From positions 34,534,001 to 34,598,000 of the forward strand of contig CM097887.1 of assembly GCA_044892525.1 (NCBI GenBank): a DNA stretch of 64,000 nt, given 5' to 3'. A program made the translations under genes and the position numbers. Each line of letters opens with the position of its first letter. The first letter of the stretch is position 1. Shown piece after piece: positions 745-30,537 of this stretch. A model generated the notes under the pieces. That model ran no database searches. It was not told the origin of the DNA and saw nothing but the letters and a program-made list of their open reading frames with translations. Source of the DNA: Schmidtea polychroa. Lineage: Eukaryota.

Positions 745-809
745 TTTTGAAGTAAGTATTTATTAAGTATTTATTTATTATTTATTAATTATTTATTAAT
801 TTAAGAAGA

Positions 810-1636: not shown

Positions 1637-4600
1637 TGCTGTGTCACTACTCGGTTGACTATTTCTGCGTTCATTTCCTGGCCTAGGAGATGAATGTCCA
1701 TTTTGATTACTACTATGATCCCTTTGTCAACTCCGAGCAGAGTCTTCAGATAACCTACACTCCAAAATAGCACCCGTGAATTTCTTCGCGTTGGTGATGT
1801 GCTATGCCGTCGAGACGCCAGTAAGCAGGTGAGCCCCTGCCTTAGGACTACTCCTTACTGAGACCTCGACTTCCTACCCTCGACTGCCGATAGAAGGACT
1901 TACGTCTTATTCGAATTGTCCATCCACTTTACTACTCATCGATTTAAATGCAAACTGATACTTTAAACTCTCTCGGGAACACTACTTATTACAATCATCC
2001 AAACTACTCATAAATGAAAAACAAGTGAAAACAGAATCATTTATTGTAACATTGAACATGCGGAATACTAATGCGTTAGATACAACAGAGATATTGGGAT
2101 GAGCGACGATCAAAGAAGGTATAATGAGTTCAGTTAGACAGCCCATCGGATATCAAGATCAGTTCCCGGGAGCAATTCTACTTTCCCAATTCCTCGTCCG
2201 CTAATAATTCTTCTAAGTTAAAAAACTCGGAGGCATTCTCCTCCCAAGTCACTCCAGCGGCGGAGATAATTCGCCCGGAGGTCATTGATGTTGGATCTAT
2301 TGCCGCCGGAGGGGCGCTGGCTTCACTTGCTGGATTCGTCGGTTGTGCAATTTGTTTAGCGGCTATTCGCTCCCGCTGTTTCCTTTTACGCTCGGCTCGT
2401 GATAGTTGCCGGCGTTTTGGCTTCGAGGTTGTTGAGGTAACTGGAAGTGTGGGGGACGTAAGGACGATCGCCGAGGGCCCCTTACTTGTCCCAACGAAGA
2501 TAACCTCTGACCGTTTGGGCGAGAGTTGGGTCTCCACACAGTCGCGGCATGACTTCCTTGCAGGAGGAGACGACTTAGAAGAGGTGTCGTGATGTGGTGG
2601 GAAAAGATTGGCGGCCTCGTTGATCTGTATACTGACTATCTTTTTGGTCGTTGCTGCCTATAAGTACACCTTGTGTAGGGCTTCCAACTACTCCTTTATT
2701 AGGCTTCTCTGGGAGCGGCTCTCGGAGATTAGAGCGTCCCGACAGTGTTCGCTGCGATACAGCCTTTTCTGGACTTCCTTCATTTAAGTGGGACTGAACC
2801 ACGTCCCTTCTAACTCATCTATTTTCCGCTTATACCGTCCAATCTAGGTCTGTAGGTCTTTGATTATCGCATTTTTGTCCGAGCAGGAGAAGCAAGGACG
2901 TAACGCTGTCTTGGCAGTTGGTATCATGATGGCTGTAAAAATGATATTTAGATATAGAGTATATATTATCTGAATAAATCGCGCGTGGCCAATTAGCTAC
3001 TCTCAAAATACTCTACAAAAAAAATAGCTGCGTTAAGTGAAGAAAATTCCCTTTTCCGACAAAATCGTTTCCATCCTATAAGGGATTTCAAAGATTCGAT
3101 TAACTAGGTGATATCGACTTGACGAATGCAAAATCTTGGTACTCATGAATTAATAATTCTAGGTTTTGTTTCAAAAAAAAATGATTGGATTGTAGGCCGA
3201 CATAGATCCTAAAATCACCCTAGTTATCTCGGCAATTTCATTCTTACATATTCGCTACATTTAATAATTTTAATGAAAATAATTTGGTAATAAAGAGGTA
3301 TTATATATCAAAGCGGAATCTCTCTTGTGGGTCGATTATCCTCATCGGTATGAAATTGAAATGACTATTTAGGAACCCCCGGTGACTAGAGTGTGTAGTA
3401 CAGGAGAAAATCCGCATTTATATTTAGTAGTAGTGTAGACAACCCAAATGTTTATAGTGTGCCATTGCTCGATTGATTTACTATCAGTTCTGGGCATTTC
3501 ATGACCTCTCAATTTTTACTTAATGGTAGAAACAAGCATTAGTGAGTTGTACCAGACGGGTAGATAAAATTGAGGCGGCTAGACTCGCGAAATGTCAAAA
3601 ATAATCAACTCTATTCGACTAACATGTTGGATCTACTGATCTAATTTGCCAGGCTGGTGTTCACCTAATTCCGTTAAACCAAAAGAACGATTGAGGGAAT
3701 TTGAGTAGTCAGCCGTCTGCTGATAATAGCCGCGTTATCTGTAATGAGGGTAGTAATCTCTATCTATAAATCCGGGTGCTATTCCGAGTCACTGACACAC
3801 TCGTATGTCGATATACTGGTGGTGAATTGGTATGTGTACTTGGGACAGTCGCATGACAGCTGCCTAGTGGTATGAATGGATTTGTTAGTATTACATATCT
3901 CTTATCTAATATGAATTTTGCCTACTGTTGAATCACTTGTGAAACTGGATGTACTGAGTTTATCTGATGGATGTTAACTTCACAGACATCTCACCGTGTA
4001 TCTAGGTTTCCAAATTCTCACCGTGTGGCTAGTCACAGGAAATCGCTGATCTATGCTGCTGCGATCTCGCATTATGGATTTTTTCTCTATTGTCATGGTT
4101 ACGGGGATTTTTACTGATTATCTAAATGTTCACTGGAAGACAACAACAAGAAGAATTACTAACACTCGGCTCTTTTATTATGCTGTCAAGGTTGGAATTC
4201 ACTCGTTTGGTAGGCCACTGTACTCCTCGCAATTATAATACTACCTCGATGTATTCAATGTGCTGGATGGACGGTTTGTCGAGTTGTTGTTTTTTGAAAT
4301 AAATGTCGTTTAACGGTAGTTTGTATATTTACCTTTGGTATTATGTAATTTATCGAAATTTTCTGATGACCTATGCCTTTGGGAAATTCATCAAGATTGA
4401 GGGTAAGTGGAAAATGTAGATACAAAACGACAGTTACGGCGTTCCAGAACGGGAGTTTCGAAAGTTATTTTATTAGAGCAATATTTTCGGTGACGTATCC
4501 TATAAGATGACACAAAAATTGTCGACGAGTTCGTGAAAACTATGGTATAGATTGATTCAAATAGTATAACTGCTCCAAATCTCCCAAAAAGAACCTATAA

Positions 4601-4734
4601 TTCAGGAATGCGACACCCTCAATCACTGTACGAATCACCTCAAGCTTCTTACATCATTTATTCATCAACTTCTTTAACGCTATGTAACTACTACTTTTCT
4701 AGAAAATTTTCTATATGATTTAGTCGCACGTTCA
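1637..4734 (+). mobile_element. Long LTR, element A (about 3.1 kb, TGCTG...TTCA)
   Basis: Inverted homology to 14768-17492. Similarity begins exactly at TGCTG and both copies end TTCA, followed by a conserved leader. Confidence 0.65.
2178..2927 (-). pseudogene. LTR-embedded antisense ORF (249 codons, coiled-coil N-terminus), 4 in-frame stops
   Basis: Colinear 750-nt homologue of 16188-16937. Stops at 2844, 2784, 2688 and 2658 all align with Gln codons in B. Preceded by TTTTTACAG (2933-2941). Confidence 0.85.
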
Positions 4735-4865
4735 GCGACGGACCCGTGAGGAAGCCCCCACATTTCGGCCCGATTCAGCTGCGTGATTGAAACATTTCGC
4801 ACCCACCGGCTGAGCACCCGAAGGCTCCTCGCACCATGGTACGAAATGTTTCAACTCCACGTCCT
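4735..4865 (+). other. Conserved GC-rich leader at the PBS position of element A
   Basis: GCGACGGACCCGTGAGGAAGCCCCCACAT... is a close inverted match to 14638-14767. Confidence 0.7.
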
Positions 4866-5033
4866 CCAAAACTCGAAAATTCATAAAAACATTAATATCA
4901 AACATAAGTCATAAAAATCCTGAAAATAATACGTTTATTGTTAATCGATACATTTATACATTATCATTAATGAAATTAGGATCAAATGAAGAAAGTAGCT
5001 TAAATTTTTAATAGATTAATAAATAACCATAGA

Positions 5034-8060: not shown

Positions 8061-8287
8061 TTTGTTTTAAAAGTTTTTTTTATTAAATTTATGAATTTTT
8101 TGAAATAATTTTAAATAAATTCAATTAATGTATTTCCATTCTTATCAACCTTCTTATCTATGCCAATTCTCAGTATTTACCTCTCATGATGTATGCGGCT
8201 ATAACGAAAATACACCCAAAAACACTCCATATACTACATTAATCAGGATCGAGACTAGACGAAAAGTCAAACGACGGAAACTCCACA

Positions 8288-9927
8288 ATGGATTGGGCAA
8301 CCATACAGCCAAACTTGGAAATGATCAGATTCATCTGCAAAAACGCGACAAAAGAAGTTGAAAACATCTGCAAAAATACATCCCAATTTCAGTGGAATAC
8401 GGTACGGAAAAATCTAGAAGCAATGAAATTATTACTAACATGGAGAGTACCGCACAGTAATAAATACGCGATAAACGTAAACGAATTTTATGAGAACGGC
8501 GAAAATGCGATGGTCAAAAATACATTAACTAAAGGGGGGACACCTAAAATTATACTAAGTGTATTAAATAGAGAAGACCTGAGATTCACAAGAAACCAGA
8601 ACGAACAACAACGAATTGGAAAATACCGCCGTATACAACTAAGAGAATTAGTAAAAGAATTGAACCGGAAAAGACACGCAGTAACCGGAAGGAAGGAATT
8701 CGAATTTGAGGCTAAATTAGCAAGAAACAGAGTACTGACAGCATACCGAAGATTGTTGAACGATATAAATGTCGAGGACGACATTTTAAACGACAGCGGG
8801 GGAGATAAATACGATGATAACGATGGAAAAGGTCGAAAGAAGGACAAAGAGAAAAGAAAACCGGAAGAGGATAACCCGGAAAATAAAGACCCAGGTACGG
8901 GAAAAGAGGGAAACAACCCGGAAAACAAGATGAAAGAGGAGGAAAAACCAAATAATGGAAAACAGAGGGTATGCCTACCTTTCACCAACAAAGAAATAGA
9001 AACAAATATGATACTAATGATAATTGTACTAACCATGATAGAGGTAGTAACAGCCCATGGAGGGACGAGAACGATAAAAGAGACCAAAGAAGCGGAAAAT
9101 CACAGGAGAGGAACTAAAGCAGGAAAAGAAAAAGCAAGTGCAGGAGCAACAATGGGATCTGAAAGAGGAATGGGATTTAAAGGAAAGATGTATACTAGGA
9201 AGATGCATGTCCCGAGCATATCAGAGATTAGTGTTGATAAACGAGGATACAGAACCGATAACGGAAGTAGGAATACAAGAAGCATACCAACATCGAAACA
9301 AAAAGAGAATAACGAAAGCCAAATGGAAAGAGGTGCACCTAGGAAAAGGAGGTGAAATAGTGATAACACAACTCCAACCAAGAAAAGAACACCGAGTTTG
9401 TATTTCAAGGCTAGGACCAGGAGAGAACTGCCTACAATATGTGACGCAGCAACAGCCACCAAAGAAATACACGGTCTGTATCTTGAGAAAAGGACCAGAG
9501 AAGGAATGCAGACGGTATCCAGGGAAAAGAGGAAAGAAAAGAAAAACTAATGACGAAGGAGACGACGAATGAAAACGCAAGAAAACCAACGAGAAAAACC
9601 AAGACAACTACGTATCAGAAGAAGAAATGGAAAAAATACGAAAAATGGCAAAAGAGGAAAAATCTGAAACAACGAGTACAGTGACAAAAAATGGAGACTC
9701 AGAGATCATCAGCGTAAAGCATGAATCAGCGGAATAATAATAACAGGGGCATTTTTAATCATAACGGGGGGAACAATAAAATCATCAAAGATAGACGACA
9801 TCGCGGAGAACTGGAGTTGACCAGAATCAGAAATTTTCAACATCGAATAAAAAGACCCAGTAAAATAAGTCAAGAGCAGTGGATGGAGACCTGGAGTACC
9901 CAGCGTCCCCCGAATCCACAAATATAG
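8288..9927 (+). pseudogene. Large accessory ORF of unknown function, broken into several frames
   Basis: Track ORFs 8288-9355, 9138-9572 and 9721-9927 overlap or continue in frame with the same A-rich codon usage. Confidence 0.55.
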
Positions 9928-10084
9928 AAAGGATTATGACTGTATATAATTGTAAAAAGTAAGTATATCTTATGTATATAACAGTATCATATTTTTATAT
10001 AAGCGCGGTATCATTAGTATATAAAGATCGGGAGAACCATATAAAATTAAATAAAACCAAGTTGAGAATGTATATAAATTAAGA

Positions 10085-10444
10085 ATGGAGCAAAGAAATA
10101 ACGAAATAAATCACAACACGACAACCGAAAATATGTGGAAGCAACAATGTGCCGTTTTAGCACAACCAGTATCTAGCCTACAAGAGCAAGGACTTACAAT
10201 GCAAAGGAACCTAGTTGATAGTCTAAACAAGGGATTTAGCTATTTAAAGATAATTGAGGATCAGAGGTCAATAATCGAACAAATGCAGAGAGAGATAGAA
10301 CGGATAACAAGATACAGCCAGAGACAGGAAGAAGAGTTAGTGAGAATGGCGGAAGAAGCAGAATACGAAGAGATGAAAGATTGGTCAGAATGGTTAATGA
10401 GCAGAGAAGAGGGCGGACAAGAGACCGACTCTTCTGAACCATAA
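10085..10444 (+). CDS. Accessory coiled-coil protein, 119 aa
   Basis: Intact ORF rich in Q/E heptads, bounded by AT-rich spacers. Confidence 0.6.
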   Translation: MEQRNNEINHNTTTENMWKQQCAVLAQPVSSLQEQGLTMQRNLVDSLNKGFSYLKIIEDQRSIIEQMQREIERITRYSQRQEEELVRMAEEAEYEEMKDWSEWLMSREEGGQETDSSEP

Positions 10445-10527
10445 ACAAAACCTAAACTAGATGTAAATAATGGTAAATAAAATATCGAACCTGTATCGAT
10501 AAGAACTATATGTATATAATTGTAGGC

Positions 10528-11832
10528 ATGGATAGACAACGAGGAGAGGAGTTTAACGAAATTATCGAGTTAGTCAGAAATTCCGCAGCAATCAGAATAC
10601 ACAAACATGTCATGTGCGGAATATGTGAAAAATTGTTAAAGGAACCCCATCAAACCAAATGCGGATGCAGATTGTGCAAAGAATGCATAAAAGAAACAAT
10701 AAAAAACAGACCACAGTGGTGCCCGATATGTAAAGAGACACTGATATCAAGTCTAGAAGATACTAACGAAGATAAAGCCGCAGTAAAGGACATGCTGAAC
10801 ACTAATCTAGGATGTAAAAATACCCCATGCGAATGGAGAGGATCGACATGGAAAGTAAAACAACACCTAGAGGAATGTTTGTATAGAGTCAGCCAGTGTG
10901 AGCGATGCCAGAAGATAATTCAAGCTAACGAGGAAAAGGAACATCAAAGCCAGTGTGAAGAGAGACTAGAAAGATGTGAATATTGTGGAGAAATAGACAC
11001 GTGGAAAAATCTCACCATCAAACATCACAATGTCCAAGAGGAAAAGGTATGTGTAGAATTCTGTGGTGAATGCCCGAACGGATGCAACAAGGGGGAAACA
11101 ATAAAAATAGCCCAGCATCTAAAAGAATGTGAAAGGAAAAGAATGATATGTGTATTAGGTAAATGGGGCTGTCAGAAATTACTACACAGAGGAGACTTAC
11201 CACATCATTTAACAGAAAATTTAATAACTCACGCAGAAATGTGGTCAACAAATGGAGACTGAAATAACCTCATTGAAGGCATTGATTAAAGAACTATTAG
11301 AAGAAAGAGAAGCATTCGAACAAGCTCGAGCAAACATAAAAATGCAAATAAATCGAATGGAAATCAGTAATGAGCAAGCCAAAGTGCTACATCAAAAAAT
11401 AACCGAAATAAATCTCAATGAAATACTGCCATATGGAAAATTACGGGAGTGAAAGAAAAAATACAAAAAGCAAAGACCGGGGAAGAGACAAGAATAACAA
11501 GTCCCGCATTCCTCTCTTGGAAGAACGGATACAAAGTGAAAATGAAGATATATCCTAACGGAGATGGAATCGGATTGGATACACACTTTTCGATCTTCTT
11601 CCTAGTATGTAAAGGGGAACACGACGAAGTAATAGAATGGCCGTTTCAGGCTAAAATCGATATCGCAATAATGAATGACCGAAGCATCCACGAACAAAGC
11701 TTCAAAACAACGGGAAATCAGCTAGCCAACCAAAGACCCCTGGAAGAAGGAGCAGCAACGGGAGCACCTACATTCATTTTGCAACAAAGGGTAGAGGATA
11801 TGGCGAGAGAAGGAAAGAGCAGAACCGAGTAA
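10528..11832 (+). pseudogene. TRAF: Intronless TRAF-family protein (RING, TRAF zinc fingers, coiled coil, MATH) with 2 frameshifts
   Basis: CGICEKLLKEPHQTKCGCRLCKEC...CPIC RING, CPNGC zinc finger, and a MATH domain WKITGV..ITSPAF..GYKVKMKIYPNGDGIGLDTHFSIF..GEHD..WPF. Frameshifts at about 11250 and 11430. Confidence 0.9.
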
Positions 11833-12025
11833 CGAGTGGGGATGATGTTGTATATAATAAATTTGTATATATCGGTGTATATAACCTATAAAATAGTATA
11901 TAATAGTAGTATGGGATCCGCAAATACAACAACCCAAAACTGAAGCGAAAAATCCAGGAAAAACATCAACTGAATAATAAAATCTAATATTGCGATAATA
12001 TTTAATTAGAATATATAATTTAGAA

Positions 12026-13046
12026 ATGACACAAGAGAAAACAACTGAAAGTACGACGACCCCAAGTAATGCAACCAAGACACAAATCCCCAGAGAATAT
12101 CATGAGAAATGGAACAAGGTGATGTTCCAATTAACCAACTTAACCCGCAACCACATCGAAGAAGCCAGGGAAGACGAGAGCAGTAGATATCGATGGTTGG
12201 TAAACAATCTGAGAACGGAAGCGGAAACATGTAAAAGGGCCGCACAATGGGCCTCGTTAGAAAATACTCGTCAAGAATCACATGTCACTACCTAAGGCAA
12301 CTGCTACAAGAATCGCGGAAAAGACTGACTGATGAGAATAAAAAACGAGAAACCGAAAAGCAAAAAGAGGAGAAAAAGATGCGACATCTATTGGCAGAAG
12401 CCAGGAAATGGAAACGACAGAGCAGAGAAAGGGAAAAGGAAATGAAGGAATTGCCTATGAGACTCAAGTACGAGAGCGAGCAAGGCAAATGGGAAGAGAA
12501 CCTAGTCATAAAAGAGGAACTAAAACGGTTAAGAAAGATTGCCGCCCGAAGTCAAACATGGCAAACCAAGGCCATAGAGTTTGAAAATAGGCTATGAAAA
12601 TCTCCATAAGAGAACATGAAAACGCAGCAATGGAAGAAATGATATTTCAGCAATCGGGACGAATCGTAGAATTAGTGAATAAAGTCGCCGAGCTAGAACG
12701 AGATGTCAATGGATACCAAGGAGCCCTGGAACAGCGAAACATGGTATTGACAGGAAAAAATAAAAAGCTGGAAAACGAAAGGAAAATGTATAGTAAAAAC
12801 ATTAAAAATCTGGAGATCGAAATCGAAAAATGGAAGGGCGATGAAAAGATAAAAGAACTGGACAGGCAATTAGAAGTGAAAGATGAGGAGACGAGATACC
12901 TCACCTATTTGCTCGACGAAGAGCTAAATATCACTCGAGCTCAACTACCCAACCTCTATACATCACAAAATCCTATAGCAGTCCACCTGAACCTGACAGT
13001 AGAAAGTGACGAGGGATACTGGGGTCAGGAAGAGACGTTTGTATAA
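12026..13046 (+). pseudogene. Long coiled-coil accessory ORF (about 340 aa), 2 frameshifts
   Basis: Track ORFs 12026-12295, 12247-12597 and 12594-13046 join by single frame changes. Confidence 0.6.
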
Positions 13047-13177
13047 TTGAAGTCAAAAGCAAAAAATAAAAATGGGAACTGTATCCCAACAAAAAAAAAT
13101 TAAGGGTATAAAATATGCTATAAATGTATAAGTATAAGCCGCATTGTAGCGCACTATTAATTATAAATATTATAGAC

Positions 13178-13798
13178 ATGAAGATTGAAGAGATAATAGA
13201 ACTCATGAGTGAAGTGGAAGGAGAGATTGAAGTGGAAACCACAGAAACACAAATACTAAAGAAAGAATTGCAGGAAGAGAAACGAGAAAACGAGAGACTA
13301 ATAATACATGGGAGACCGGAAAATAATTAAAGTACTAAAGAAAGAGTGCAAAGTACTAGGAAAAGTAAAGAGGGAAGCGGAAGAGAAAAATGAATGGTTG
13401 CAAGAACAACGAACACGAGGAAGAAATTGGGAAAAGATAGAGCAAGCTTCAAAGCAGAAGAAGTAATCCAAGACTATTGGAAAACAGAAGCGCAAGAGCG
13501 CCAAAGAACCATAAATAAATTAAACCAACAACTGAAAGAAAAACAACAGGAAAGTGAAGAAATGAAGAAATGGAGTCGCAAGTACGAAGAGATGGAAATG
13601 CGACATCAACAACAGCAGCGACAAAGAGGCAATGATCAGGAACCTGAACAAGATTTCCTACAAATCGTGTTAGAAAGAAATCTCGACAAAAAACGGGAAG
13701 AAATAAAAAAATTGAAAAAGGAGATACGACACCTGAAAAGAGAAGCCCGTGAAAAAGATCGGCAGTTAGAAATGCTGCCCGAATTAAGCTTGAAGTAA
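13178..13798 (+). pseudogene. Coiled-coil accessory ORF, frameshifted; homologue of 30166-30537
   Basis: RASFKAEEVIQDYWKTEA versus GASFKANEVIEDYWKTEA, and DFLQIVLERNLDKKREEIK versus DFLQLELRRNLEKKRKEIK. Confidence 0.75.
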
Positions 13799-14176
13799 GT
13801 TCAGTATGCAATTGCGGGACGCAATTTTGATGGGTCCCCGAGTGATTTGTTGGGCTGAGTCGAAGGGTATCTAAGAAATTAGGTTAAGCATAACTAAATT
13901 AAAATAAAAATAAAATAAACAAATTTACGAATAAAATAGAATAAGATATAAGAAAAACAATAATTAGAAAATAAGAATTAAAACAAAAAAATATAAAAAT
14001 AAGAAAAATTAAAATAGGACAACAGAATGACAAAAAATAACGTAAAATGCAGTAAATAATATGGAAATTAAAGAAAATAAATAAAAAATACAATAAAAAT
14101 AAAGAAAATAGGAAGAAATAACTAAAAAACAAGAAAAATAAATTAAAGCAATAAAATTAAGCGGTACTCAATTCTG

Positions 14177-14401
14177 ATTGGTCCGCACACATCAAAAATT
14201 ATTATATAGGCAAACGCAAAAATTATAAACTTACAGTTAAACCAAAAACTTTACAGACAACAGCGACCTACAGGAATTCGATTCAGAAACCAGAAACATT
14301 AGCACGTCGGCAGTTAAAAATCTACTCAGACTTCAACTAATACTTAATTCGATCCAGTACCTTCCGACTCAGCCTATAAATCTATTCAAACCCTTAGTAA
14401 G
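14177..14401 (+). promoter_or_regulatory. Antisense promoter (ATTGG 14177, TATATA 14203) and GTAAG donor (14397)
   Basis: The same three elements occur in the same order in element C (29207, 29189, 28905). Confidence 0.5.
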
Positions 14402-14767
14402 GACATTTTATTTTTTTTATCTTTGATTTATTTTAAACGGTTAATAATGATCATGTATATTTGCGAAATAATTAAATTTATAATTTGAAATGATTTTCTT
14501 TTCGTTTGATTCCGTAATAATGGGTAATTTATTAAATAATTTAGCTGCTTAATCGTAATCACTAATAATGAACGAGTTTTTCTAGATTTTTGTAATTGTT
14601 TTTATGGGTTATTATTTCATGATTTTAATCTCACGAGGAACGTGGAGTTTAGACGTTCCATACCTTGGTGTGAGGGACCTTCGGGTGCTCAGCCGGTGGG
14701 TGTGGGACGTTTCAATCACGCAGCTGATTCGGGCCGTAATGTGGGGGCTTCCTCACGGGTCCGTCGC

Positions 14768-17492
14768 TGAAGGGCACTCTAAAATGTCTCTGGAATGATC
14801 AGAAAGAAGGAGTAGAATCAATCTAATTTGTAGGAAAAGTAATAGCAGCGAATCACAGTGACTGAGCGAGTCAGAAGTCTTCGTATCTACAATAATTCTT
14901 CAAACTAAAATTCTCGTAATCTGAAAATTTAGTGTCACCGTCAACCGTAGGTCTAGATCTGTCATTTTCGTTAATAGAGTAAGCATCATCTGTCTGTAGA
15001 TTATTCCTTCACCTCGAAATTGCCACTCATACTCTGTTCCAACAATGAATGTAGTTTAAAAACCCTTATTCCGGTAGTAGAATAGCTATGTAGTGGAATA
15101 CCATACAATCATCAATATACAATCGAAAAACAAGACAAAATATGCAAAGACTTTTATTTGATTACATAAAAGGAAAACAAATTTCGACATACTTACCTAG
15201 AGATAGTGCATAAAAGTTCATATTTATATAAATTCCGAGAGGGTCGATATCCACGAGTTGAGATCGGTGCATGTATCTTGAATAATTGAATAATTCATCC
15301 ACGAAGCAATATATCCAACAGTTACGACGAGAGAGAATTTCCTAATTTAATTTTTCTGATGGACAGCAATCCAACGCAGTGTGAGGTAACATCTGAAAAT
15401 CCACGCAACATGTGAATCGGATTAAAATTCCATGGAATGAATACACACGCATACACGCGCAGGCACATATTGTGAAGTCCAGTAAACGGAACCCGTATGA
15501 GAATACCCATCAGTGATAACACTATCATGACTAAGCATAATCGCGCGAAAATAATTTTCCATGCATCACATGCATTAGAAATTTTGGTTATCTAAGAACA
15601 GTATGTAGACTCGCAGCGAATAATTATCATGAGAAATCATACCTGGTGCGTCGGGTGTAGTTTCAACTAATAGATAAAATCACTAGTCGTAAACAGATTT
15701 CACACCAGCCACGGAAAATCGACAGCAGGCAATTTGCCATTTCAAGTCCACATCGTTGGATTTTCTAAAAAATTAACGTTTATAATTAATAATTAATAGT
15801 AATTGATTTACCTATCTATCTATAAAATCCGCATATTGAAGGATTTCCGTTTATAAATTAGCCATGTATTTTAGTCTGAGCTCCTCAATGCTATTTACCA
15901 TTTTCGAGGCAAACCCAATTTGTAATAATTCCATAAACATGTAATGTTCATTTTCAACAATAATGCGTTACCTCCGTTTGACAGTCACTTGTTGCCGGTC
16001 AGTTTTCTTGTAAGTAAATAATCCCGAGGGAATGAATATCGATGAATCCAACGAAACTCCTCTTGCTAGCTACCTGTTTCTTTTCTATAGGAATACCTAG
16101 TTGACGAATAATTGTGTCGGGATGGTGACATTATAATTTGGTTTATCTTATAATTTTAGTTCTATCTTTTCTTCTTAGCCATCAGATATGTTACCCAATT
16201 CAAGACCTGTTCTCAAACCCTGTTTTTCTTGTTCCGACAAGAATGCAATAATCAAGGACCTCCAGACTCAGATCGGACGGTACAAAAAGAAAATAGACGA
16301 GTTAGAGGGGACCTGGTTTAGTCCCGCTCAGATGAAAGAAACTCAGAAAAAGTTACACCGAAGTGAACATTGTCGGGACGCTCTAATCTCCGAGAGTCTG
16401 GCCCAAAGAAGCTTGATAAAAGAGCAGTCCGAGGCGCTGCATAAAGTATATATCCAGGCAGCGGCCACTAGAAAGATGGTGAAAATCCCCATCGGCGACG
16501 CCGAGAATCTCTTTCCGGCACACCATGATACATCTGCCAAATCGTCGCCCCCTCCAAAAAGGTCTTGCCGGCCGTGCGTAGAAGCCCAACTCTCGTCGGA
16601 TCCACATGAAGTTGTTTTTGTTGGACATAGTCGAGTACTGCCTAACATCGCCTCTACTTCGGCGGCAGCCCCGAACAATGCATCGACCGCAAAGCCCAAG
16701 CGTCGGCAGTTATCCAGGGCCGAACGTAAAAAGAAATAGCGTGAGCGAATAGCTGCGAAACAACCCCAGCCCCTGCCGGATCTCGCGAGTAAAGACAATA
16801 ACGTCCCTGCCACAATTGACCTAACAACAGGGACACCAGGGCGAATCATATCTGCCGCTGGGGTAACGTGGGAGGAAAACGCCTCCGAATTCTTTGATTT
16901 GGACGAATTACTCGCCGACTCTGAGTGGGAAAAATGAGAATTTGCCCGTGAAATGACCTCATCCTTGGGAGAGTCCTGAATCAACTAATATCGTTTTTCT
17001 ATTACTGCGTTTTTCCTTATTCTAATTCTGTTGTATAAATTATTGACGCGTCTGTAGTGTAATGTTAGAAATAAACAATTTTCGTCTGTATAGGTGTTTT
17101 GTTTTTCGTTCATAAGAGATTTAACATTGAGTGGTAAATAGCATTGAAAGTCTCTGAGATTCGAGGAGTATTGTTCAATTTGCAATCCAAACCAAAGGTA
17201 TGGCGATGGGGTGACAAAATAAGTAGACGTAAGTCTTTCTATCGGCAGTCAGGGGTAGGAAGTCGAGGCCACAGTAAGGAGTAGTTCGAAGGTGATGGCT
17301 CACCTGCTTACTGGTGTCTCACCGGCATAGCACAGTTCCAACGTGAAGTGATTCACGGGTGCTATGTTGGAGTGTAGGTTATGTACGGGTCCTGCTCGAG
17401 GGTGACGAAATCGACGAGCGTAATCGAAGTGGGCATTCATCCTCTAGACTAAAAGTGGAACTAAAGGTGGTCATCCGAGTAGTACCCCAGCA
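14768..17492 (-). mobile_element. Long LTR, element B (about 2.7 kb, TGCTG...TTCA)
   Basis: Homologous to LTR A, with TG/CA termini at the homology boundaries. Confidence 0.65.
16188..16937 (+). pseudogene. LTR-embedded antisense ORF (249 codons), one stop at 16737
   Basis: The frame continues after TAG as RERIAAKQ...GVTWEENASEFFDLDELLAD and matches copy A. Acceptor TTCTTCTTAG ends at 16178; AATAAA at 17070. Confidence 0.85.
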
Positions 17493-17789
17493 TAATTTTT
17501 GGGGGCTCAGCCGGGATTTAGATTGAAATTTCCGTTGACTAGTGAGAACTTCACCGGGATTTTTGAATTTAATTGATTGATGAATGCAAATTGACTAATG
17601 CTTACCGAATCTTATCATAAAATTACGATTAGAAAATAATAAAATTAAAGATATAAATAAAGTTAATTTAATAATGGGGAAATAAGATAAAAGTAAAATA
17701 AATTATAACGATTTTAAAAAGGAAAATGTTTGATGAAACAACCATTAATTAGCTGTATATTATTAAGACATTTTCTTTTCCCAACAGAC

Positions 17790-18266
17790 ATGACGGAATT
17801 CGCAGAACAGATGCAACAATTAATCAACTTCATTGATATAGAAAACGATCCCATAAAAATGCTTATACACAAAAGAGAGAGGATTAAGAGCATACAACTA
17901 CAAACAATGGGACAAGCACCAGTCGTACCTAACCATATGTCAATAGCCATAGGTCTAAGTCGTAGAGATGGTAAAGTAAATCACGAAACAATATATCAGT
18001 GGTATCAGGAAAGATTGAGACACCCTGCATTGAATCTAGAATATCATCGACTACGAGATCAATTAGATACTATACCCGACATAATTGAACAGAAGATACA
18101 AGAAAAACTCACTAAATTACGAACCTGTCCGTCTTGCAATCTTCGTCCTATACGCGTACTGTTCTTACCTTGTGGACACCTCAGTCACTGTGAAGAATGC
18201 GTGAACGATTTAAAACGATGTATGATATGCAAGTATGAGATAAACTTTGAAACATTATATCATTGA
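17790..18266 (+). CDS. Protein with a C-terminal IAP/XIAP-type RING finger (C3HC4_3), 158 aa, no BIR domain
   Basis: CPSCNLRPIRVLFLPCGHLSHCEECVNDLKRCMICK. The ATG at 17790 follows the acceptor TTTTCTTTTCCCAACAG. Confidence 0.8.
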   Translation: MTEFAEQMQQLINFIDIENDPIKMLIHKRERIKSIQLQTMGQAPVVPNHMSIAIGLSRRDGKVNHETIYQWYQERLRHPALNLEYHRLRDQLDTIPDIIEQKIQEKLTKLRTCPSCNLRPIRVLFLPCGHLSHCEECVNDLKRCMICKYEINFETLYH

Positions 18267-18325
18267 AACATTATACATCTTAATGTTAAAAATTGATATT
18301 TTCTTTAACCGTATTTAGAAAAACA

Positions 18326-18393
18326 CCCACGGGCATTTGAAAAAGTCTCCACGGGCACTTTTTTGCCCGCGGGCTCTAGGTTGGGCACCGCTG
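18326..18393. mobile_element. hAT (Charlie-type) element end
   Basis: Ends GGTTGGGCACCGCTG and has repeated CCACGGGCA subterminal motifs. Confidence 0.5.
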
Positions 18394-18980
18394 AGATAAA
18401 GGAAACTCATATGGTTTATTATGGTGAATGAAATTGTTAAAGATACAATAACATCTATGAACATCGAATTAATATTGACGATTGAATATGAATAAATGTA
18501 GTCTTTGTGTGAAATACTATTAAAGCTTGAATTTTTATTTATTTTGTGGCGAATAAAATTTGGTTGTGAACTGAGTAGTTTATTGTTTTTATTTCTATTT
18601 TTAATTTTTGGATCAAACGAAAAGAAAAGTAAATTAACGTGGAATTAGTCCCAATATAGGCTGTAGGAGTACAAACCGAGCCACCTTCGGGCGGTACGTT
18701 CTATCATAAAGAAAACCAATTGGGAGGGGATAACCGATCAACCTAAGTGAGGAGCGTAGGGCGAGGTACCATCGCAAATGATAAAAAGTTTCTACGGTAT
18801 GACTGATCACCATGCCAATGTAGAAATGGATCATCGCGATCGTTTTGTGTTTTGAGCAAGGGGGAAAAGGGGAACCACTAGCGGTAAAGATTAAGTTGAC
18901 AAATTAAAAGTAGAGAGATAATGTAGAGTAAAAGAGGAAAGAAAGAAGCAGAAGCATGCAGAATGAGAAAGAATAAGATC

Positions 18981-19127
18981 GAGTTGTGAAAAGGTCCAGC
19001 CGGTCAGGGAAATTAAAACTGAGTTGTGAAAAGTCCAGCCAGTTCGGAGATATTAAGACTGAGTTGTGAAAAGTCCAGCCGGTCAGGATAATGAAGATTG
19101 AGCTGTTGAAAAGTGCCAGCCAGTCGT
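18981..19127 (+). repeat. Tandem repeat, 40-bp unit, about 3.7 copies
   Basis: GAGTTGTGAAAAG(G)TCCAGCC at 18981, 19021 and 19061, with a degenerate copy near 19100. Confidence 0.9.
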
Positions 19128-19140
19128 AAAGGCCTAGAAA

Positions 19141-19339
19141 AATAGTGAGATTTATTGCTACTAGTGAGAAGGCATTATGCCTACCGAAAAATAGCGTTAA
19201 GCTAATAGTGAGATAGCATTTATTGCTACTAGTGAGAAGGCATTATGCCTACCGAAAAATAGCGTTAAGTTAATAGTGAGATAGCATTTATTGCTACCAG
19301 TGAGAAGGCATTATGCCTACCATGAAATAACGTTAAGCT
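19141..19339 (+). repeat. Tandem repeat, 68-bp unit x3, with internal hairpins
   Basis: Units at 19141, 19204 and 19272: AATAGTGAGATAGCATTTATTGCTACTAGTGAGAAGGCATTATGCCTACC... Confidence 0.9.
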
Positions 19340-21339
19340 AATAATAAGACAGAATATTAAAGCTAGCTAGAAATGAATTGAATTAGATACGATAATTTGA
19401 AATTAGAGAGGATTAAACGAGCTCGTGGAAGGGGACGATAAAATTCTTTTAGAGAGAAAGAGAAACAGAAAAGGAAAATAAATTGAGATAATGGAAAAAG
19501 AATAGGTGGGAAGAGATGATGAGCAAAGAGGAAAATAAGTAACTAATTAAAGGGATCCTAGTGAAGTAGACACTCTACAGAATATTTTTCGTTTAAACCG
19601 GGGAAATACATTTTATTGGTTCCAGAGTAGAATCGAGTGAGAATAATAAATATAAAAGGATAAGTAAAGTAGCGACAATAGCGCAAAAGGATTAAGAAAA
19701 TAAGGGGGGGGGGGTAATAAGCAGTTACCGACGACGACCTATTCATATTATAATTGATAAAGATAGATAATTATTACGACCCTATAGATAATTGTTACTA
19801 CCCCATATAGATAATTAAAAATCGACGAAAAATACGGGCTGATGGGAAATTATAACCCGCGGAAGTGATTGCCAAAATAGGGGAAGCATAAACAGAGACC
19901 TAACCGGTGACTGTGTTTGAATGTTGCAGAAAGAATGATGAAGTCGTGTAAGCAGATGCAACACGAGATCATTTTTTCATTTTAGATACCAAACCAATCC
20001 AGTCCATTAAGCCCATCCAGAACCTGCACAAAGGGAATTCAAAGAAACCAACAACCAATCAGCGATAACCAATTCAGAACCCGCTCAGCAGGAATAACAC
20101 AACCCGAAGATTTCAAAAAACGGAAGACGATACAGATAACGACATCTCCAACTTCCAACGAATCACAGATATATTCAGTCTCGTTGTATTAGCAGCAATC
20201 AGCCAAGGACTCATAAACCTCCTCAGAATATCATTAGCAGAATCGTATAGAATACAGACACTCATCACGCGGCTCCGGACTCGGTACATCTGGTACCGGA
20301 TTCATGATTGGAACCGGGGCTGAACCTGGATAATTACGGCCCGGTTATCCGGAGTGGCCCAGAGCCCGACGCCCCGGCGTGGGTGAAGACGGAGCCCACT
20401 AATGACTTGTTGCGGGTTAGGGAAAAGTCGAGAGAGTCCGAGGCCGCTCCACGATCCTGAGGGGTGATTGAGAGTGCGACCCCTCCTGGGTAAAACAGAC
20501 ATTGTAACATTGTAGTATCTAAATAAATAATTTTCATCATCTGATGGGTATGTGATTGAATCTTGTGATTGTCCAGAACAAGGCGGTTGACAGAAGGGTG
20601 TTTGGGAAAGCAATCTCGATAAGGGACCGAAATAAATCGGACACATGCCTTCTAACGGCCGTCCATGAACCCATAGAGTTCTCGACAATTATAGCGCTCT
20701 TAAGGCGATCACTTTTTGCGAGTACTCAACCCCTTGGTACAGTACCAACGTTGATTACTCAACGGGTACCAAGCGGAAAATAATGTTGTATTCTGGGTTA
20801 CGCTGGTAACAGCACTAAATAATAATTGTTCGGACACCTGTAACCCACCAATGTAAACGTCTTATTTGATGATTTCGCACGGAATCTACTTTGACTAATT
20901 GTCAGATTTTAAATTCTTTCGCTACTCAGCCCCGTAAAGTAGATTCGTTTGATCGATTTTCATTTGCTATTTCTCTAATTTTTCCGGTTTCCTTTGATAA
21001 ATTTATTAATTTTAATTTATAATCAACAGTGTTGCTTTTAACTTTTTTACCCTAAACAAGATGGTGATGACAACATTTTTATTTTCTGGAATTATTTTTA
21101 TTTAAAAAAAAATTTTTCAATAAAAGTTTTATTTGACATAAATTTATCAGCATTAATAAAGATATACCAAGTGAGAAGAATAATTTTAAAAATTGTTTTT
21201 TAATTGATTTTTGATAAAATTTAGAGAATCAACTTTTTTGTGACCTGGAAAAATTTAGGTTAAAAGAGATAACAAATATGCCTCAATATTTCAATAAATG
21301 TGTCAATTTTGAATTTCAAATCCTATTTTTTTAATATTG

Positions 21340-22393: not shown

Positions 22394-22452
22394 TCTATTT
22401 ATTTTCTAAATATTTTAAAATATAAACTTAATAATAAATAATTACTTATTAT

Positions 22453-25870: not shown

Positions 25871-25949
25871 AATAGTTATTCTATCTTTTGAATAGTCTCA
25901 TGTAAGTTGCTGTACTTATCATAAATTGTTTTAAGTATTATTTGCTTTC

Positions 25950-28574: not shown

Positions 28575-28588
28575 TGGCGACCACGCCA
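28575..28588 (+). promoter_or_regulatory. Primer-binding site TGGCGACCACGCCA
   Basis: Identical to the PBS in front of gag at 474-487. Confidence 0.8.
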
Positions 28589-28904: not shown

Positions 28905-29211
28905 CTTACCACAAACCTCTCTGAGAGTGTTGAAAAATAATATCAAAGGTGTCTCGAATGGTTTTCTAAGTCTAGTAATCTGGTTCCCTAAATTTCGATC
29001 TCTGTCCGTTTAATCTGAATGAATTTAATTCGATATCTAGTAGATGGTCCCTGTCGAATGAGCTGTAGTGTCTGTTAAGAAATGGTTCCTAAATCCTGTA
29101 GAGTTTTTTGGTTAAATGGTTAATAAAATTTATAACTTTTACCTGTAGAGTTTTTTGGTTAAATGGTACTCTACAGCTATTTCGCCTCTTATATATTATT
29201 TTTCGTCCAAT
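28905..29211 (-). promoter_or_regulatory. Antisense CCAAT/TATA promoter and GTAAG donor of element C
   Basis: CTGATTGG...TATATAAG and TTAACCAAAAAACTCTACAG (twice) match B 14173-14260. GTAAG at 28909-28905. Confidence 0.5.
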
Positions 29212-29544
29212 CAGGACACGACTTGTTTGTAATTTTATTATTTATATGTTTTTCATTATAATGTAATGGGTTTTAACGACCTTACTTGTTTTTTTATTAT
29301 TATTTTCTCAATTCTTATTGTTTTTCTCTTATTTTTCTGCGAATTTATTGCCATTTTATTGCACTATGATTTTTTGTTTTAATTAGTCCATGCAATTATT
29401 TAGGAATGGTTTTATTTTTATTTTATTACTTTAATTTCTCGTATATTTTCCTTAAATTTTGTTATTTTATTTCCCTTTTATTGTTAGCGGGTTAGATAAT
29501 TTTCTTTTTGTCCTATTTATTGTCTTAAAAGTTTTATTATTTTA

Positions 29545-30030
29545 TTAGTTATTCCTATTTCTTTTATTGTTATTCGATTTTTGCAGATGTCGTTCACTTT
29601 TGGGAGGGTGATTATCACGATTAGGGTGGTTTCGGTGATTACCACAGAGGAGTTCATGAGTGTCATTTGTTTCACTTGAATTTTTTGTTTTTTCGACTGG
29701 GTTTTGTATCTCCTGATGTTGGACTTGTTGCTCCAACTGATCGAATTGTTGGATTTGGCTCAGGATTCGTTTATTGATGACTTTGCACATGGGGTTGTTA
29801 CTACACATTAGTCTGATGTTGTTGACGTAATTTCGGTTTGCTCGAATATTGTCGATAAGGTTGGTTTTCACTATACTTGGGTAGATGCATGATGGGGTTA
29901 TTTGTTCGACCTTTTGGTTAGGTTTTCTGTTGTCTCGAATCTGTTCTATTTGGGGTTTTACTGGTTGCTGCCTTGTCAGTTCAAGAATTATCTTCATCAT
30001 CATCATCATTACGACCGTTTTGTTTCTCAT
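29545..30030 (-). CDS. Accessory ORF of element C, unknown function (N/Q-rich)
   Basis: Open frame with ATG at 30030 after TGTATAACAG. It is absent at the equivalent position of B. Confidence 0.55.
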   Translation of the reverse strand: MRNKTVVMMMMMKIILELTRQQPVKPQIEQIRDNRKPNQKVEQITPSCIYPSIVKTNLIDNIRANRNYVNNIRLMCSNNPMCKVINKRILSQIQQFDQLEQQVQHQEIQNPVEKTKNSSETNDTHELLCGNHRNHPNRDNHPPKSERHLQKSNNNKRNRNN

Positions 30031-30165
30031 AATACTGTTATACATTAATTATTTTTATACACATTTATACACATCGCATTTTGTTCGCTTTTAATTTTTT
30101 CGTTTCTTTTTAGGGTCTTTCTCTCGGATCCGCATTAATTTGGATTCTGCTTTTATGACCCTATG

Positions 30166-30537
30166 TCAGAGTTCGGGTAATATTTTCAGCTGTCTATTTT
30201 TCTCCTAGACCTCTTTTAGGTGCCTTATCTCTCTTTTTAAAGTTTTGATCTCTTTCCTTTTCTTTTCAAGGTTCCGTCTTAGTTCTAATTGTAGGAAATC
30301 GTTTTCTTCTGGGTCATTTTTCCTTTGGCTTTGTTTTCGATGTTTTGCTTCCATTTCTTGATATTTATTGTTCCATCTTTCCATCTCTGTGCTCTCTTTT
30401 AATTTTATTTTCAGCTGGTTTTCTAACTCCTTTATGGTTTCCTGTCGCTTTCCTGCTTCTGTCTTCCAATAATCTTCGATTACCTCATTTGCTTTGAAAC
30501 TGGCTCCCTCCATAATTCTTCCGTGATCTTTTCCCAA
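30166..30537 (-). pseudogene. Coiled-coil accessory ORF, homologue of 13394-13798, with a premature TAG
   Basis: The frame continues after the stop as EKNRQLKILPEL versus EKDRQLEMLPEL in B. Confidence 0.75.

What the first reader, a model, noticed from the sequence alone, without database searches (positions are those of the whole stretch)
8288..17492. Long-LTR retroelement family with an antisense multigene cassette downstream of the PBS
Seen: at least five genes (a large unknown ORF, three coiled-coil ORFs and a TRAF) lie head-to-tail on one strand, followed by an A-rich tract, a promoter, a conserved leader and a 2.7-kb TG...CA repeat. The same layout recurs in C, where a canonical PBS and a CCAAT-TATA-AATAAA LTR fix the element sense as opposite to the genes; LTR end to CCAAT is about 590 bp in B and 630 bp in C. 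D has an antisense RING gene in the same slot. Established: antisense extra ORFs in plant Tat-lineage elements lie between pol and the 3' LTR. Giant gypsy elements with extra ORFs (Burro) are reported from Schmidtea mediterranea and are the obvious comparator. Inference: a virus-like retroelement carrying host cell-death or immune modulators between PBS and gag. Whether this arrangement is already described must be checked.
Basis: partly seen in the sequence, partly recalled or inferred. Interest (0 to 1): 0.9.

Follow-up and report, generated by a model that had tools for sequence, protein, structure and literature searches.

The report
Retroelement pieces; genes sense, not antisense
This is therefore a mosaic of decayed retroelement pieces with sense-strand TRAF and IAP-RING accessory genes, of the kind already described for planarian Burro elements, and not a new antisense cassette.

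Summary
Same-strand ORFs at 8288-13798 include a TRAF. They are followed by an A-rich tract, a CCAAT/TATA module, a leader motif shared with locus C, and a 2.86-kb repeat (14635-17492). That repeat has a second, inverted copy at 1637-4866.

The antisense interpretation fails for this locus:
- Seven bases after the repeat lies a 20-nt perfect complement of a natural tRNA-Pro(CGG) 3' end. It is on the + strand, the strand of the genes.
- The repeat carries a ~249-codon ORF on that strand, under strong purifying selection (dN/dS about 0.05).
- It also carries strand-specific RNA hairpins with compensatory changes.
- An intact IAP-type RING ORF follows the PBS in sense. Further on come the window's only G-run (polypurine-tract-like) and a diverged repeat-like block, also on +.

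The repeat therefore behaves as a + sense LTR. The cassette lies upstream of it, not downstream of the PBS.

Locus C's "canonical PBS" is a 14-nt near-palindrome with only an 11-nt tRNA match, which is chance level.

No paired LTRs, target-site duplication or gag-pol occur in the window. TRAF, RING and coiled-coil accessory domains in sense are already published for Burro/GYPSM1. Interest is moderate to low.

The parts
8243..9355 (+). Long ORF of unknown function (ATG at 8288, 355 aa; 370 stop-free codons), with a K/E/G-rich C-terminal half
   Evidence: Longer than any stop-free stretch in 300 shuffles. No homologue, Pfam family or solved relative. AlphaFold2 model unusable, pLDDT 39.
10085..10444 (+). 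Coiled-coil ORF (119 aa), preceded by a TATATA-37 nt-AAACCAA module at 10018-10060
10510..11832 (+). Intronless TRAF gene (RING, TRAF zinc fingers, coiled coil, MATH). Broken: the reading frame changes twice.
   Evidence: Pfam RING and TRAF-mep_MATH; TRAF6/5 in PDB; frame map; tblastn with relatives. Best relatives are 43-44% identical stand-alone TRAFs of about 390 aa.
11890..11940 (+). Second promoter-like module inside the cassette: TATA boxes, then AACCCAAAAC at 11931, 95 nt before the ATG at 12026
   Evidence: The strict motif occurs only 4 times in 64 kb, always in the cassettes and on the gene strand.
12026..13046 (+). Three abutting coiled-coil ORFs in different frames. They may be one broken coiled-coil gene or separate small genes.
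   Evidence: only weak coiled-coil-type Pfam hits
13394..13798 (+). Last coiled-coil gene of the cassette (134 aa), conserved in locus C
   Evidence: 68% nucleotide identity to 30506-30211. Differences by codon position 28/19/45%.
13880..14165 (+). A-rich tract with many AATAAA
14177..14256 (+). Promoter-like module: CCAATCAG on the opposite strand (14177-14181), TATATA (14203-14208) and the leader motif (14237-14256). Shared with locus C.
14635..17492 (+). Repeat copy B, read as a long LTR in + sense (2858 bp, ends in CA)
   Evidence: Homology to the inverted copy A in three blocks. No third copy in the window.
14635..14771 (+). Conserved 137-nt block that folds into two long hairpins
   Evidence: 88% identity between A and B. 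Every A/B difference within the predicted stems preserves pairing, including 3 compensatory pairs. Energy -62.5 and -65.9 kcal/mol on this strand, against -40 and -44.8 on the other.
16188..16937 (+). LTR-borne ORF of about 249 codons, preceded by a splice-acceptor-like polypyrimidine-AG that is conserved in copy A. Broken by one premature stop.
   Evidence: Codon-position differences 21/15/53% and dN/dS about 0.05 versus copy A; break count; no homologue or family
17070..17075 (+). AATAAA, present at the same place in copy A, about 135 nt after the ORF stop
   Evidence: Direct reading
17225..17492 (+). Conserved, structured 3' block (U5-like) that ends in CAGCA
   Evidence: 77-87% identity between A and B; consensus fold with pair-preserving changes
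17500..17519 (+). Primer-binding site: perfect 20-nt complement of the CCA-tailed 3' end of a tRNA-Pro(CGG)
   Evidence: tRNA-Pro genes in loci L017 and L044. Unique in the window, 0 expected.
17790..18266 (+). Intact 158-aa ORF with an IAP-type C-terminal RING and no BIR domain. A polypyrimidine-AG lies directly before the ATG.
   Evidence: Pfam zf-C3HC4_3; cIAP1/2 and XIAP RINGs are the best solved relatives
18970..19343 (+). Two tandem-repeat arrays (40/79-nt and 68-nt units)
19686..19714 (+). Polypurine-tract-like run ending in G11, the only G-run of 8 or more in the window
20633..20800 (+). Diverged homologue of the repeat's 3' block, preceded by AATAAA at about 20522. Possible remnant of another LTR of the same superfamily.
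   Evidence: nhmmer E 0.14 window-wide and 0.003 in the targeted 1.5 kb, with 0 of 40 control chunks hit; alignment
1637..4866 (-). Repeat copy A (3230 bp, TG...CA), with no PBS or PPT beside it. Solo or truncated LTR.
2178..2927 (-). Copy A of the LTR-borne ORF. Broken: 3 premature stops and up to 6 single-base indels relative to copy B.
29096..30537 (-). Locus C: coiled-coil gene (30537-30205), A-rich tract, CCAAT/TATA (29211-29189) and two copies of the leader motif
28575..28588 (.). Locus C's PBS-like 14-mer, a near-palindrome readable as TGGCG on either strand
   Evidence: 11-nt match to human tRNA-Arg(UCG) on the + reading. 0 of 121 prokaryotic matches lie at tRNAs, which is uninformative.

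Best explanation
The region is a mosaic of decayed pieces of long-LTR retroelements of the planarian Burro type. Every polarity signal I could test in locus B points the same way, along the + strand.

**What each part is**
- The 2.86-kb repeat B is an LTR in + sense. Its long U3 begins with a structured RNA block and carries a spliced accessory gene of about 249 codons. This works like the LTR-borne sag gene of MMTV. An AATAAA follows, then a conserved, structured U5 that ends in CA.
- Seven bases later, tRNA-Pro would prime minus-strand synthesis at 17500-17519.
- The internal region opens with a sense-strand IAP-type RING accessory ORF behind a splice acceptor. Tandem repeats, a polypurine tract and a diverged LTR-like block follow.
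- Copy A is a solo or truncated LTR in the opposite orientation.

**The cassette**
- The multigene cassette (unknown ORF, coiled-coil genes, TRAF) lies upstream of this LTR on the same strand. It is therefore neither antisense to it nor downstream of its PBS.
- It is most simply a separate, older fragment of a related element. It carries its own repeated TATA-AAC(C)CAAAAC promoter modules, and the LTR element landed in the leader of its last module.

**Shown versus inferred**
- Shown: the strand of the PBS, ORFs, RNA folds and G-run; selection on the LTR ORF; the domain identities.
- Inferred: the U3/R/U5 borders, the splicing, insertion of one element into the other, and that the TRAF and IAP-RING proteins modulate host ubiquitin, NF-kB or apoptosis signalling.
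For: - **PBS.** It is a 20/20 complement of a natural eukaryote-type tRNA-Pro(CGG) 3' end plus CCA. It is unique in the window with 0 expected and lies 7 nt after the repeat's terminal CA.
- **LTR ORF on the + strand.** Codon-position differences are 21/15/53% and dN/dS is 0.05, against 1.2-1.8 in the other two registers. The acceptor-like YAG before the ATG and the AATAAA after the stop are present in both copies.
- **Structured 5' block.** It folds at -62.5 and -65.9 kcal/mol (z -3.2 and -4.7) on this strand, against -40 and -44.8 on the other. All stem differences preserve pairing. The 3' block is also structured.
- **RING ORF.** It is intact, IAP-type and on the + strand.
- **Polypurine run and second LTR-like block.** The only G-run of 8 or more in 64 kb is on + at 19704-19714. 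A repeat-like 3' block follows on + at 20633-20800.
- **Composition.** Purine-rich skew on + runs from 8.2 to 20.3 kb.
- **Promoter modules.** They recur inside the cassette at 10018, 11931 and 14240. The module at 14.2 kb is therefore one of a series rather than an LTR promoter.
- **Locus C.** It lacks the repeat and any comparable structured block after the same leader.
- **Literature.** Burro/GYPSM1 carries RING, Smc-like, MATH_TRAF_C, BIR and BCL2 motifs in sense. It also has an upstream accessory TRAF ORF in a Dugesia relative, tandem repeats, and LTRs that bring the element total above 30 kb.
Against: - There is no direct LTR pair, no target-site duplication and no gag-pol remnant in the window.
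- Repeat B and the LTR-like block at 20.6 kb are far too different to be the two LTRs of one insertion.
- No PPT abuts either repeat copy.
- The TATA candidate inside the repeat (17034) is not conserved in copy A.
- The 7-nt LTR-PBS spacer is on the long side.
- The tRNA-Pro gene used for the test comes from metagenome contigs, not from this organism.
- Both cassette copies are followed a few hundred bases after the same leader by a PBS-type sequence. Simple independent insertion does not explain this.
- No sequence-level link to Burro could be tested.
Confidence: 0.6

Rival explanations
1. The repeat is a 5' LTR read on the - strand, a PBS and conserved leader follow at about 14771-14635, and the cassette is an antisense multigene unit lying between the PBS and gag.
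For: - It explains economically why both cassette copies sit next to LTR/PBS-like sequence at similar spacing, 590 and about 635 bp.
- The cassette has its own TATA modules and many AATAAA on its strand. An antisense unit would need these, and they would be awkward inside a sense genomic RNA.
- The + strand 11-mer in locus C equals the start of a known PBS type.
Against: - In B, the only statistically real PBS is on the + strand on the far side of the repeat.
- Nothing at 14771-14750 on the - strand begins with TGG or ends a tRNA-like sequence.
- On the - strand the LTR's PBS-proximal 1.4 kb would be unalignable between copies, while the 'leader' would be 88% conserved.
- The repeat's ORF and its RNA structures are on the + strand.
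- Locus C's motif is palindromic and its tRNA match is chance-level. Its + reading implies G at tRNA position 61, where C is near-universal (established tRNA knowledge).
- In C, AATAAA lies 8 nt from the proposed LTR end.
- Locus C's - strand stays A-rich well past the motif.
Confidence: 0.07
2. The unit made of A-rich tract, CCAAT/TATA and leader is itself the LTR that owns the PBS, or is the promoter-bearing part of a larger composite LTR. The 2.86-kb repeat would then be a nested solo LTR or an LTR module. The cassette would sit in sense either at the 3' end of a tandemly joined element or inside a giant U3.
For: - In C the leader ends in CTCA, followed by GA and then TGGCG on the gene strand. 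This is a canonical LTR-PBS junction if read on that strand.
- In B the leader also ends in CTCA just before the repeat.
- The promoter and leader are conserved between B and C.
- C shows the same layout without the repeat.
Against: - It requires the repeat to have landed within a few bases of a PBS by chance.
- No target-site duplication flanks the repeat.
- The polyadenylation-type signals lie upstream, not downstream, of the TATA.
- The same promoter module recurs inside the cassette, so it looks like a gene promoter.
- No second copy of the unit exists in the window.
- Genes before an LTR and a PBS after it would require tandem elements at two independent loci.
Confidence: 0.2
3. The cassette is not retroelement sequence at all. 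It is a compact array of independently transcribed, intronless genes: a fast-evolving host gene cluster or the relic of a DNA-level mobile or virus-like element. Retroelements and DNA transposons later inserted into it.
For: - Each gene is preceded by a TATA plus initiator-like module and followed by AATAAA.
- No gag, pol, LTR or PBS belongs demonstrably to the cassette.
- Two diverged copies show coding-type constraint.
- The nearest TRAF relatives are stand-alone proteins with the same start.
Against: - The TRAF, RING and coiled-coil accessory content is exactly what is published for Burro elements.
- The strong A-rich sense-strand bias continues into the neighbouring retroelement part.
- The TRAF is frame-broken, as in a decaying repeat.
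- No hallmark gene of any DNA element was found.
Confidence: 0.15

Closest known systems
Burro / GYPSM1 giant Ty3-gypsy-like elements of Schmidtea mediterranea and relatives (Grohme et al. 2018; Arkhipova and Yushenova 2019, PMC6431247)
   Same: - Long LTRs.
- Host-derived accessory domains of the ubiquitin and apoptosis type (RING, coiled-coil 'Smc', MATH_TRAF_C, IAP-related) carried in sense.
- An accessory ORF upstream of gag in one relative.
- Tandem repeats in the internal region.
- Decayed copies with stops and frameshifts.
- An AT-rich genome context.
   Different: - No gag, protease, RT, RNase H or integrase is present in this window.
- No BIR, BCL2 or ankyrin domain was found.
- Accessory genes here are separate small ORFs with their own promoter-like modules, not parts of one 4873-aa polyprotein.
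- I saw no description of an LTR-borne ORF in the one review I could read.
- Sequence similarity could not be tested, and the host organism was not identified.
MMTV-type LTR-encoded accessory gene (sag in U3)
   Same: An ORF lies inside the LTR in sense. A splice acceptor sits just before it and the polyadenylation signal just after it. The gene has been under purifying selection.
   Different: There is no sequence or fold relationship. The protein here is a coiled-coil, low-complexity protein of unknown function. This is an analogy of layout only (my own knowledge of MMTV, not tested here).
Plant Tat/Ogre lineage elements with extra or antisense ORFs
   Same: Very long LTRs and extra ORFs of unknown function.
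   Different: Their antisense ORF lies between pol and the 3' LTR. Here no ORF could be shown to be antisense to the LTR/PBS polarity.
Non-autonomous LTR elements (LARD/TRIM-like)
   Same: The stretch 14635-20900 reads LTR, PBS, short internal region without gag-pol, polypurine tract, LTR-like block.
   Different: The two terminal blocks are far too dissimilar to be one element's LTRs, and there is no target-site duplication. A chimera or nested remnants are more likely.

Membership tests
LTR retroelement (general) | PBS complementary to a tRNA 3' end immediately downstream of the 5' LTR | tested here: met
   The site at 17500-17519 (+) is a 20/20 complement of tRNA-Pro(CGG) plus CCA. It lies 7 nt after the repeat's terminal CA.
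LTR retroelement (general) | Two direct, near-identical LTRs (TG...CA) flanking an internal region, with a 4-6 bp target-site duplication | tested here: not met
   The two copies are inverted, 9.8 kb apart and alignable only in blocks at 69-88%. No target-site duplication was found; the 8-mer shared by the flanks has P = 0.17. Only copy A has clean TG...CA ends.
LTR retroelement (general) | Polypurine tract immediately upstream of the 3' LTR | tested here: inconclusive
   A unique G11-ended purine run lies at 19686-19714 (+), about 0.9 kb before a diverged repeat-like block. No PPT abuts repeat copies A or B.
Ty3/gypsy (Burro) elements | gag with CCHC knuckles, and pol in the order PR-RT-RH-IN | tested here: not met
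   No such Pfam family was found in any ORF scanned. Only the 44 reading frames submitted in those four calls were scanned, so short remnants could be missed.
Ty3/gypsy (Burro) elements | Accessory domain set reported for Burro: RING/AIR1, Smc-like coiled coil, MATH_TRAF_C, BIR, BCL2-like, ankyrin | tested here: inconclusive
   Found: RING plus TRAF zinc fingers plus MATH, coiled coils and an IAP-type RING. Not found: BIR, BCL2, ankyrin.
Ty3/gypsy (Burro) elements | Nucleotide or protein similarity to Burro1-4 / GYPSM1 | not testable with these tools
   No tool held those sequences. Protein searches with the window's ORFs returned no giant polyprotein.
   In B, the PBS, LTR ORF, RNA structures, RING ORF, G-run and cassette are all on the + strand. 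Locus C is ambiguous.

The most novel reading that the evidence does not exclude
The cassette may be a self-contained module of independently promoted genes (TRAF, coiled-coil proteins, an unknown 355-aa protein). Each gene would sit behind the same TATA-AAC(C)CAAAAC core promoter. The module would travel as a regular part of a retroelement family. That could be inside a giant U3, or directly upstream of an LTR-PBS junction in tandem or recombinant copies, alongside a second accessory gene encoded inside the LTR itself. This would be a virus-like retroelement that runs several of its own transcription units for host-signalling modulators.
Probability: 0.15. Interest if true: 0.7.

Novelty: new member of a known kind. 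Interest (0 to 1): 0.35.

Why it matters
If the antisense layout had held, it would have been a new way for a retroelement to carry intron-safe host genes. It does not hold here.

What remains is still useful:
- A clean, tool-based polarity call (tRNA-Pro PBS) for a long-LTR family.
- An LTR-borne gene with a strong signature of past purifying selection.
- A conserved, strand-specific structured RNA block.
- Recurring promoter modules inside a TRAF-bearing cassette.

These are concrete handles for annotating giant retroelements that carry ubiquitin- and apoptosis-pathway genes. They also bear on whether such genes are expressed from the element's own signals.

Tried and rejected
**Searches that found nothing**
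- Homologues of the 355-aa ORF and of the LTR ORF: none.
- Exact-sequence look-ups of window proteins and of the best TRAF relatives: not on record. The only relative with a contig is a tandem TRAF array in a metagenome scaffold, which is uninformative.
- The TRAF in viral contigs: nothing.
- AlphaFold2 of the N-terminal half of the 355-aa ORF, to test a Gag fold: pLDDT 39, unusable, so no fold search was run.
- Rfam at gathering and permissive thresholds, and tRNA genes in the window: none. A ribozyme or tRNA-like identity for the structured block is therefore unsupported.

**Ideas tested and dropped**
- Extension of A/B homology upstream of the 137-nt block: not significant, z = 1.3.
- Similarity of C's post-leader sequence to the repeat or to 17.5-20.9 kb: none. 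C also has no comparable stable fold.
- Target-site duplication around 14630-20904, and resumption of the leader after 20905: not significant.
- G-to-A hypermutation between the copies: absent.
- One large inverted segmental duplication, suggested by the TOP2 fragments beside both repeats: rejected. The TOP2 pieces are 81-94% identical, whereas the repeat's ORF is saturated at synonymous sites, and the flanks do not align.
- Polinton-like or other terminal-inverted-repeat reading of the two inverted copies: rejected. The middles are unrelated, there are no hallmark genes, and a PBS is present.
- Decayed CCHC knuckles at 9380-9530: the twice-repeated C-x9-C-x2-Y motif does not fit the CCHC spacing.
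- Testing C's 14-mer against prokaryotic tRNAs: 0 of 121, uninformative.
- The Grohme et al. 2018 paper is not held in the library.

The PBS call rests only.

Full report
**Layout.** The window is AT-rich. It carries a purine-rich + strand from about 8.2 to 20.3 kb and a purine-rich - strand from about 24 to 32 kb.
- Within the finding's span, the + strand holds a 355-aa ORF (8288-9355) followed by several coiled-coil ORFs and a TRAF.
- The TRAF is secure. Pfam finds RING and TRAF/meprin MATH domains, and the best solved relatives are TRAF6 and TRAF5.
- The TRAF is intronless but broken: its RING/zinc-finger part and its MATH part share a frame, while the coiled-coil piece between them is open only in another frame.
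- The 370- and 261-codon stop-free stretches exceed anything seen in 300 dinucleotide shuffles, so these were real genes.
- The last coiled-coil ORF (13394-13798) recurs on the - strand at 30537-30205 at 68% nucleotide identity, with third-position-biased differences.
- After it, both loci show an A-rich tract, an inverted CCAATCAG, TATATA and a shared leader motif. That motif occurs three times in the window against 0.03 expected.

**The repeat.** Self-comparison shows that 14635-17492 (+) is related to 1637-4866 read on the - strand.
- The copies are inverted relative to each other.
- They align only in three blocks: 137 bp at 88%, about 750 bp at 69% and about 270 bp at 77%. An unalignable 1.4-1.8 kb lies between the first two blocks.
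- Homology does not extend further upstream, and there is no third copy in the window.
- The middle block is a gene. Differences between the copies fall 21/15/53% on codon positions 1/2/3. dN/dS is about 0.05 in that frame and above 1 in the other two registers.
- The ancestral ORF is about 249 codons. Copy B has one premature stop. Copy A has three, plus up to six single-base indels.
- In both copies a polypyrimidine-AG sits just before the ATG and an AATAAA follows the stop.
- The 137-nt block folds into two long hairpins. Every difference between the copies within the predicted stems preserves pairing, including three compensatory double changes.
- That fold is far more stable on the ORF's strand (-62.5 and -65.9 kcal/mol; z -3.2 and -4.7) than on the opposite strand (-40 and -44.8). 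The 3' block is also structured.
- Rfam recognises none of this.

**Polarity of the retroelement.** Seven bases after the repeat's terminal CA, the + strand reads TGGGGGCTCAGCCGGGATTT (17500-17519).
- I scanned a 16-mer from its reverse complement against metagenome contigs. Two of the 120 hits were the exact 3' end of a eukaryote-style tRNA-Pro(CGG) gene with no encoded CCA.
- Once CCA is added, that tRNA's last 20 nt are the perfect complement of the window sequence.
- The site is unique in the window, with zero expected.
- This is a genuine primer-binding site, and it reads on the same strand as the cassette genes.
- Downstream, on the same strand, lie:
  - an intact 158-aa ORF with an IAP-type RING (cIAP and XIAP are the best solved relatives), again directly behind a polypyrimidine-AG;
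  - tandem repeats;
  - the only G-run of 8 or more bases in the whole window, ending a purine-rich tract at 19686-19714;
  - after an AATAAA, a diverged homologue of the repeat's 3' block at 20633-20800 (E 0.003 in a targeted search, no hit in 40 control chunks).
- The order LTR, PBS, sense ORF, polypurine tract, LTR-like block, all on the + strand, is the canonical retroelement layout.
- The two terminal blocks are too different to belong to one insertion, and no target-site duplication is detectable.

That model placed a PBS at about 14771 and made the cassette antisense, downstream of that PBS.
- In locus B that model would leave a perfect tRNA-Pro site unexplained on the wrong side and the wrong strand.
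- It would also put the repeat's selected ORF and its strand-specific structures in antisense.
- It would require the LTR's PBS-proximal 1.4 kb to be unalignable between copies while the adjacent 'leader' is 88% conserved.
- The cassette actually lies upstream of a + sense LTR.
- In locus C, the 'canonical PBS' is the 14-mer TGGCGACCACGCCA, a near-palindrome that reads TGGCG on both strands.
  - Its + reading shares 11 nt with the PBS type that matches human tRNA-Arg(UCG). By my own calculation, an 11-nt match to one of about 50 tRNA ends is expected once or twice per 64-kb window.
  - The implied T-stem would start with G, where C61 is nearly invariant (established tRNA knowledge).
  - The - reading gives a textbook CA-NN-TGG junction.
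  - C's supposed LTR has no second copy in the window.
  - C is therefore ambiguous at best.

**What the cassette is.** It has no demonstrable LTR, PBS, gag or pol of its own.
- Its genes are compact and intronless.
- At least at 10018, 11931 and 14240 they are preceded by the same kind of module: a TATA box followed 30-45 nt later by AAC(C)CAAAAC.
- The strict form of that motif occurs only four times in 64 kb, always in the two cassettes and on the gene strand.
- The 'promoter and leader' before the repeat is thus one of a series of gene promoters.
- In C the same leader is not followed by the repeat or by any comparable structure.
- The simplest reading is that an LTR element landed in the last leader of an older cassette-bearing fragment.
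- It remains unexplained why both cassette copies run into PBS-type sequence a few hundred bases after that leader. A composite or tandem LTR arrangement, or a cassette inside a giant U3, cannot be excluded.

**Comparison with what is known.** The one detailed description I could read is Arkhipova and Yushenova 2019, PMC6431247.
- It states that Burro/GYPSM1 elements of Schmidtea mediterranea exceed 30 kb with LTRs.
- They carry RING (AIR1), Smc, MATH_TRAF_C, BIR, ankyrin and BCL2-like motifs inside a 4873-aa sense polyprotein, and they contain tandem repeats.
- In a Dugesia relative the TRAF part is encoded as an upstream accessory ORF. Decayed copies with stops and frameshifts occur in another species.
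- The gene content that made this finding look exciting is therefore already described, and in sense.
- I could not test sequence membership. No tool held Burro sequences, the 2018 genome paper is not in the library, and protein searches returned only stand-alone TRAFs at 43-44% identity from an unannotated source.
- The host organism was not identified.

**Verdict.** The retroelement and immune-modulator reading is reasonable and matches a known family type. The antisense, downstream-of-PBS architecture is not supported and is contradicted in the locus under review.
- Three features deserve a note for annotators: the LTR-borne gene, the structured 137-nt block (whose apex carries a 10-nt identity to the anticodon arm of the same tRNA-Pro and a near-copy of the PBS core), and the recurring promoter modules.
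- The finding as a whole is a new member of a known kind.

Noticed in passing
window 5034-7162 (-): hAT-family transposon. ORFs carry DUF4371 and the hAT dimerisation domain, separated by one in-frame stop. One terminal repeat is identifiable at 5034-5048. It lies 167 bp from repeat copy A.
   Followed up: partly
window 753-1363 (+) and 21648-22448 (-): Two intronless, decayed fragments that look by eye like the N-terminus of DNA topoisomerase II, 81-94% identical to each other in inverted orientation. Each lies beyond the outer end of a repeat copy. The only Pfam hit is a weak, sub-threshold HATPase_c match (E 0.0012, 19.7 bits against a cut-off of 26.4) on one fragment. Their flanks do not align, so they probably belong to another repeat family.
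   Followed up: partly
window 23342-24675 (-): Fragments of DNA transposases: a weak, sub-threshold DDE_3 (Tc1/IS630-like) match at 24304-24675 (E 0.00018, 21.9 bits against a cut-off of 28.6). ORFs at 23342-24153 look hAT-like by eye but have no Pfam family.
   Followed up: partly
window 21412-21597 and 25950-26135: A 186-bp direct repeat at 94% identity, 4.5 kb apart, bracketing the TOP2 fragment and the transposase fragments. A partial extra copy lies at 25877-25946. Its nature is unknown.
   Followed up: no
window 50004-52010 (+): Intact single-exon ORF of 668 aa encoding a Na+/H+ exchanger (Pfam Na_H_Exchanger, E 1e-62). Presumably an ordinary host gene.
   Followed up: partly
window 14675-14700 (+) and 4825-4800 (-): The apex of the first hairpin of the repeat's 5' block contains CTTCGGGTGC, identical to 10 nt of the anticodon arm of the tRNA-Pro(CGG) found in L017. 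It is followed by a 13/14 copy of the PBS core. This may be chance (about 0.015 expected) or a primer-related element.
   Followed up: partly
window 43967-44407 (-): A further weak match to the hAT dimerisation domain (E 0.002), suggesting more hAT debris in the right half of the window.
   Followed up: no
window 9380-9530 (+): A twice-repeated peptide motif (V/T)VCIxRxGPxxxCxxY lies just after the 355-aa ORF, in another frame. It does not fit the CCHC zinc-knuckle spacing.
   Followed up: no
L017 and L044 (metagenome contigs JAAUYJ010191715.1 and JAAUXV010021989.1): Both contigs carry the same eukaryote-style tRNA-Pro(CGG) gene whose 3' end matches the window's PBS. The source organism of these contigs was not examined.
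   Followed up: no
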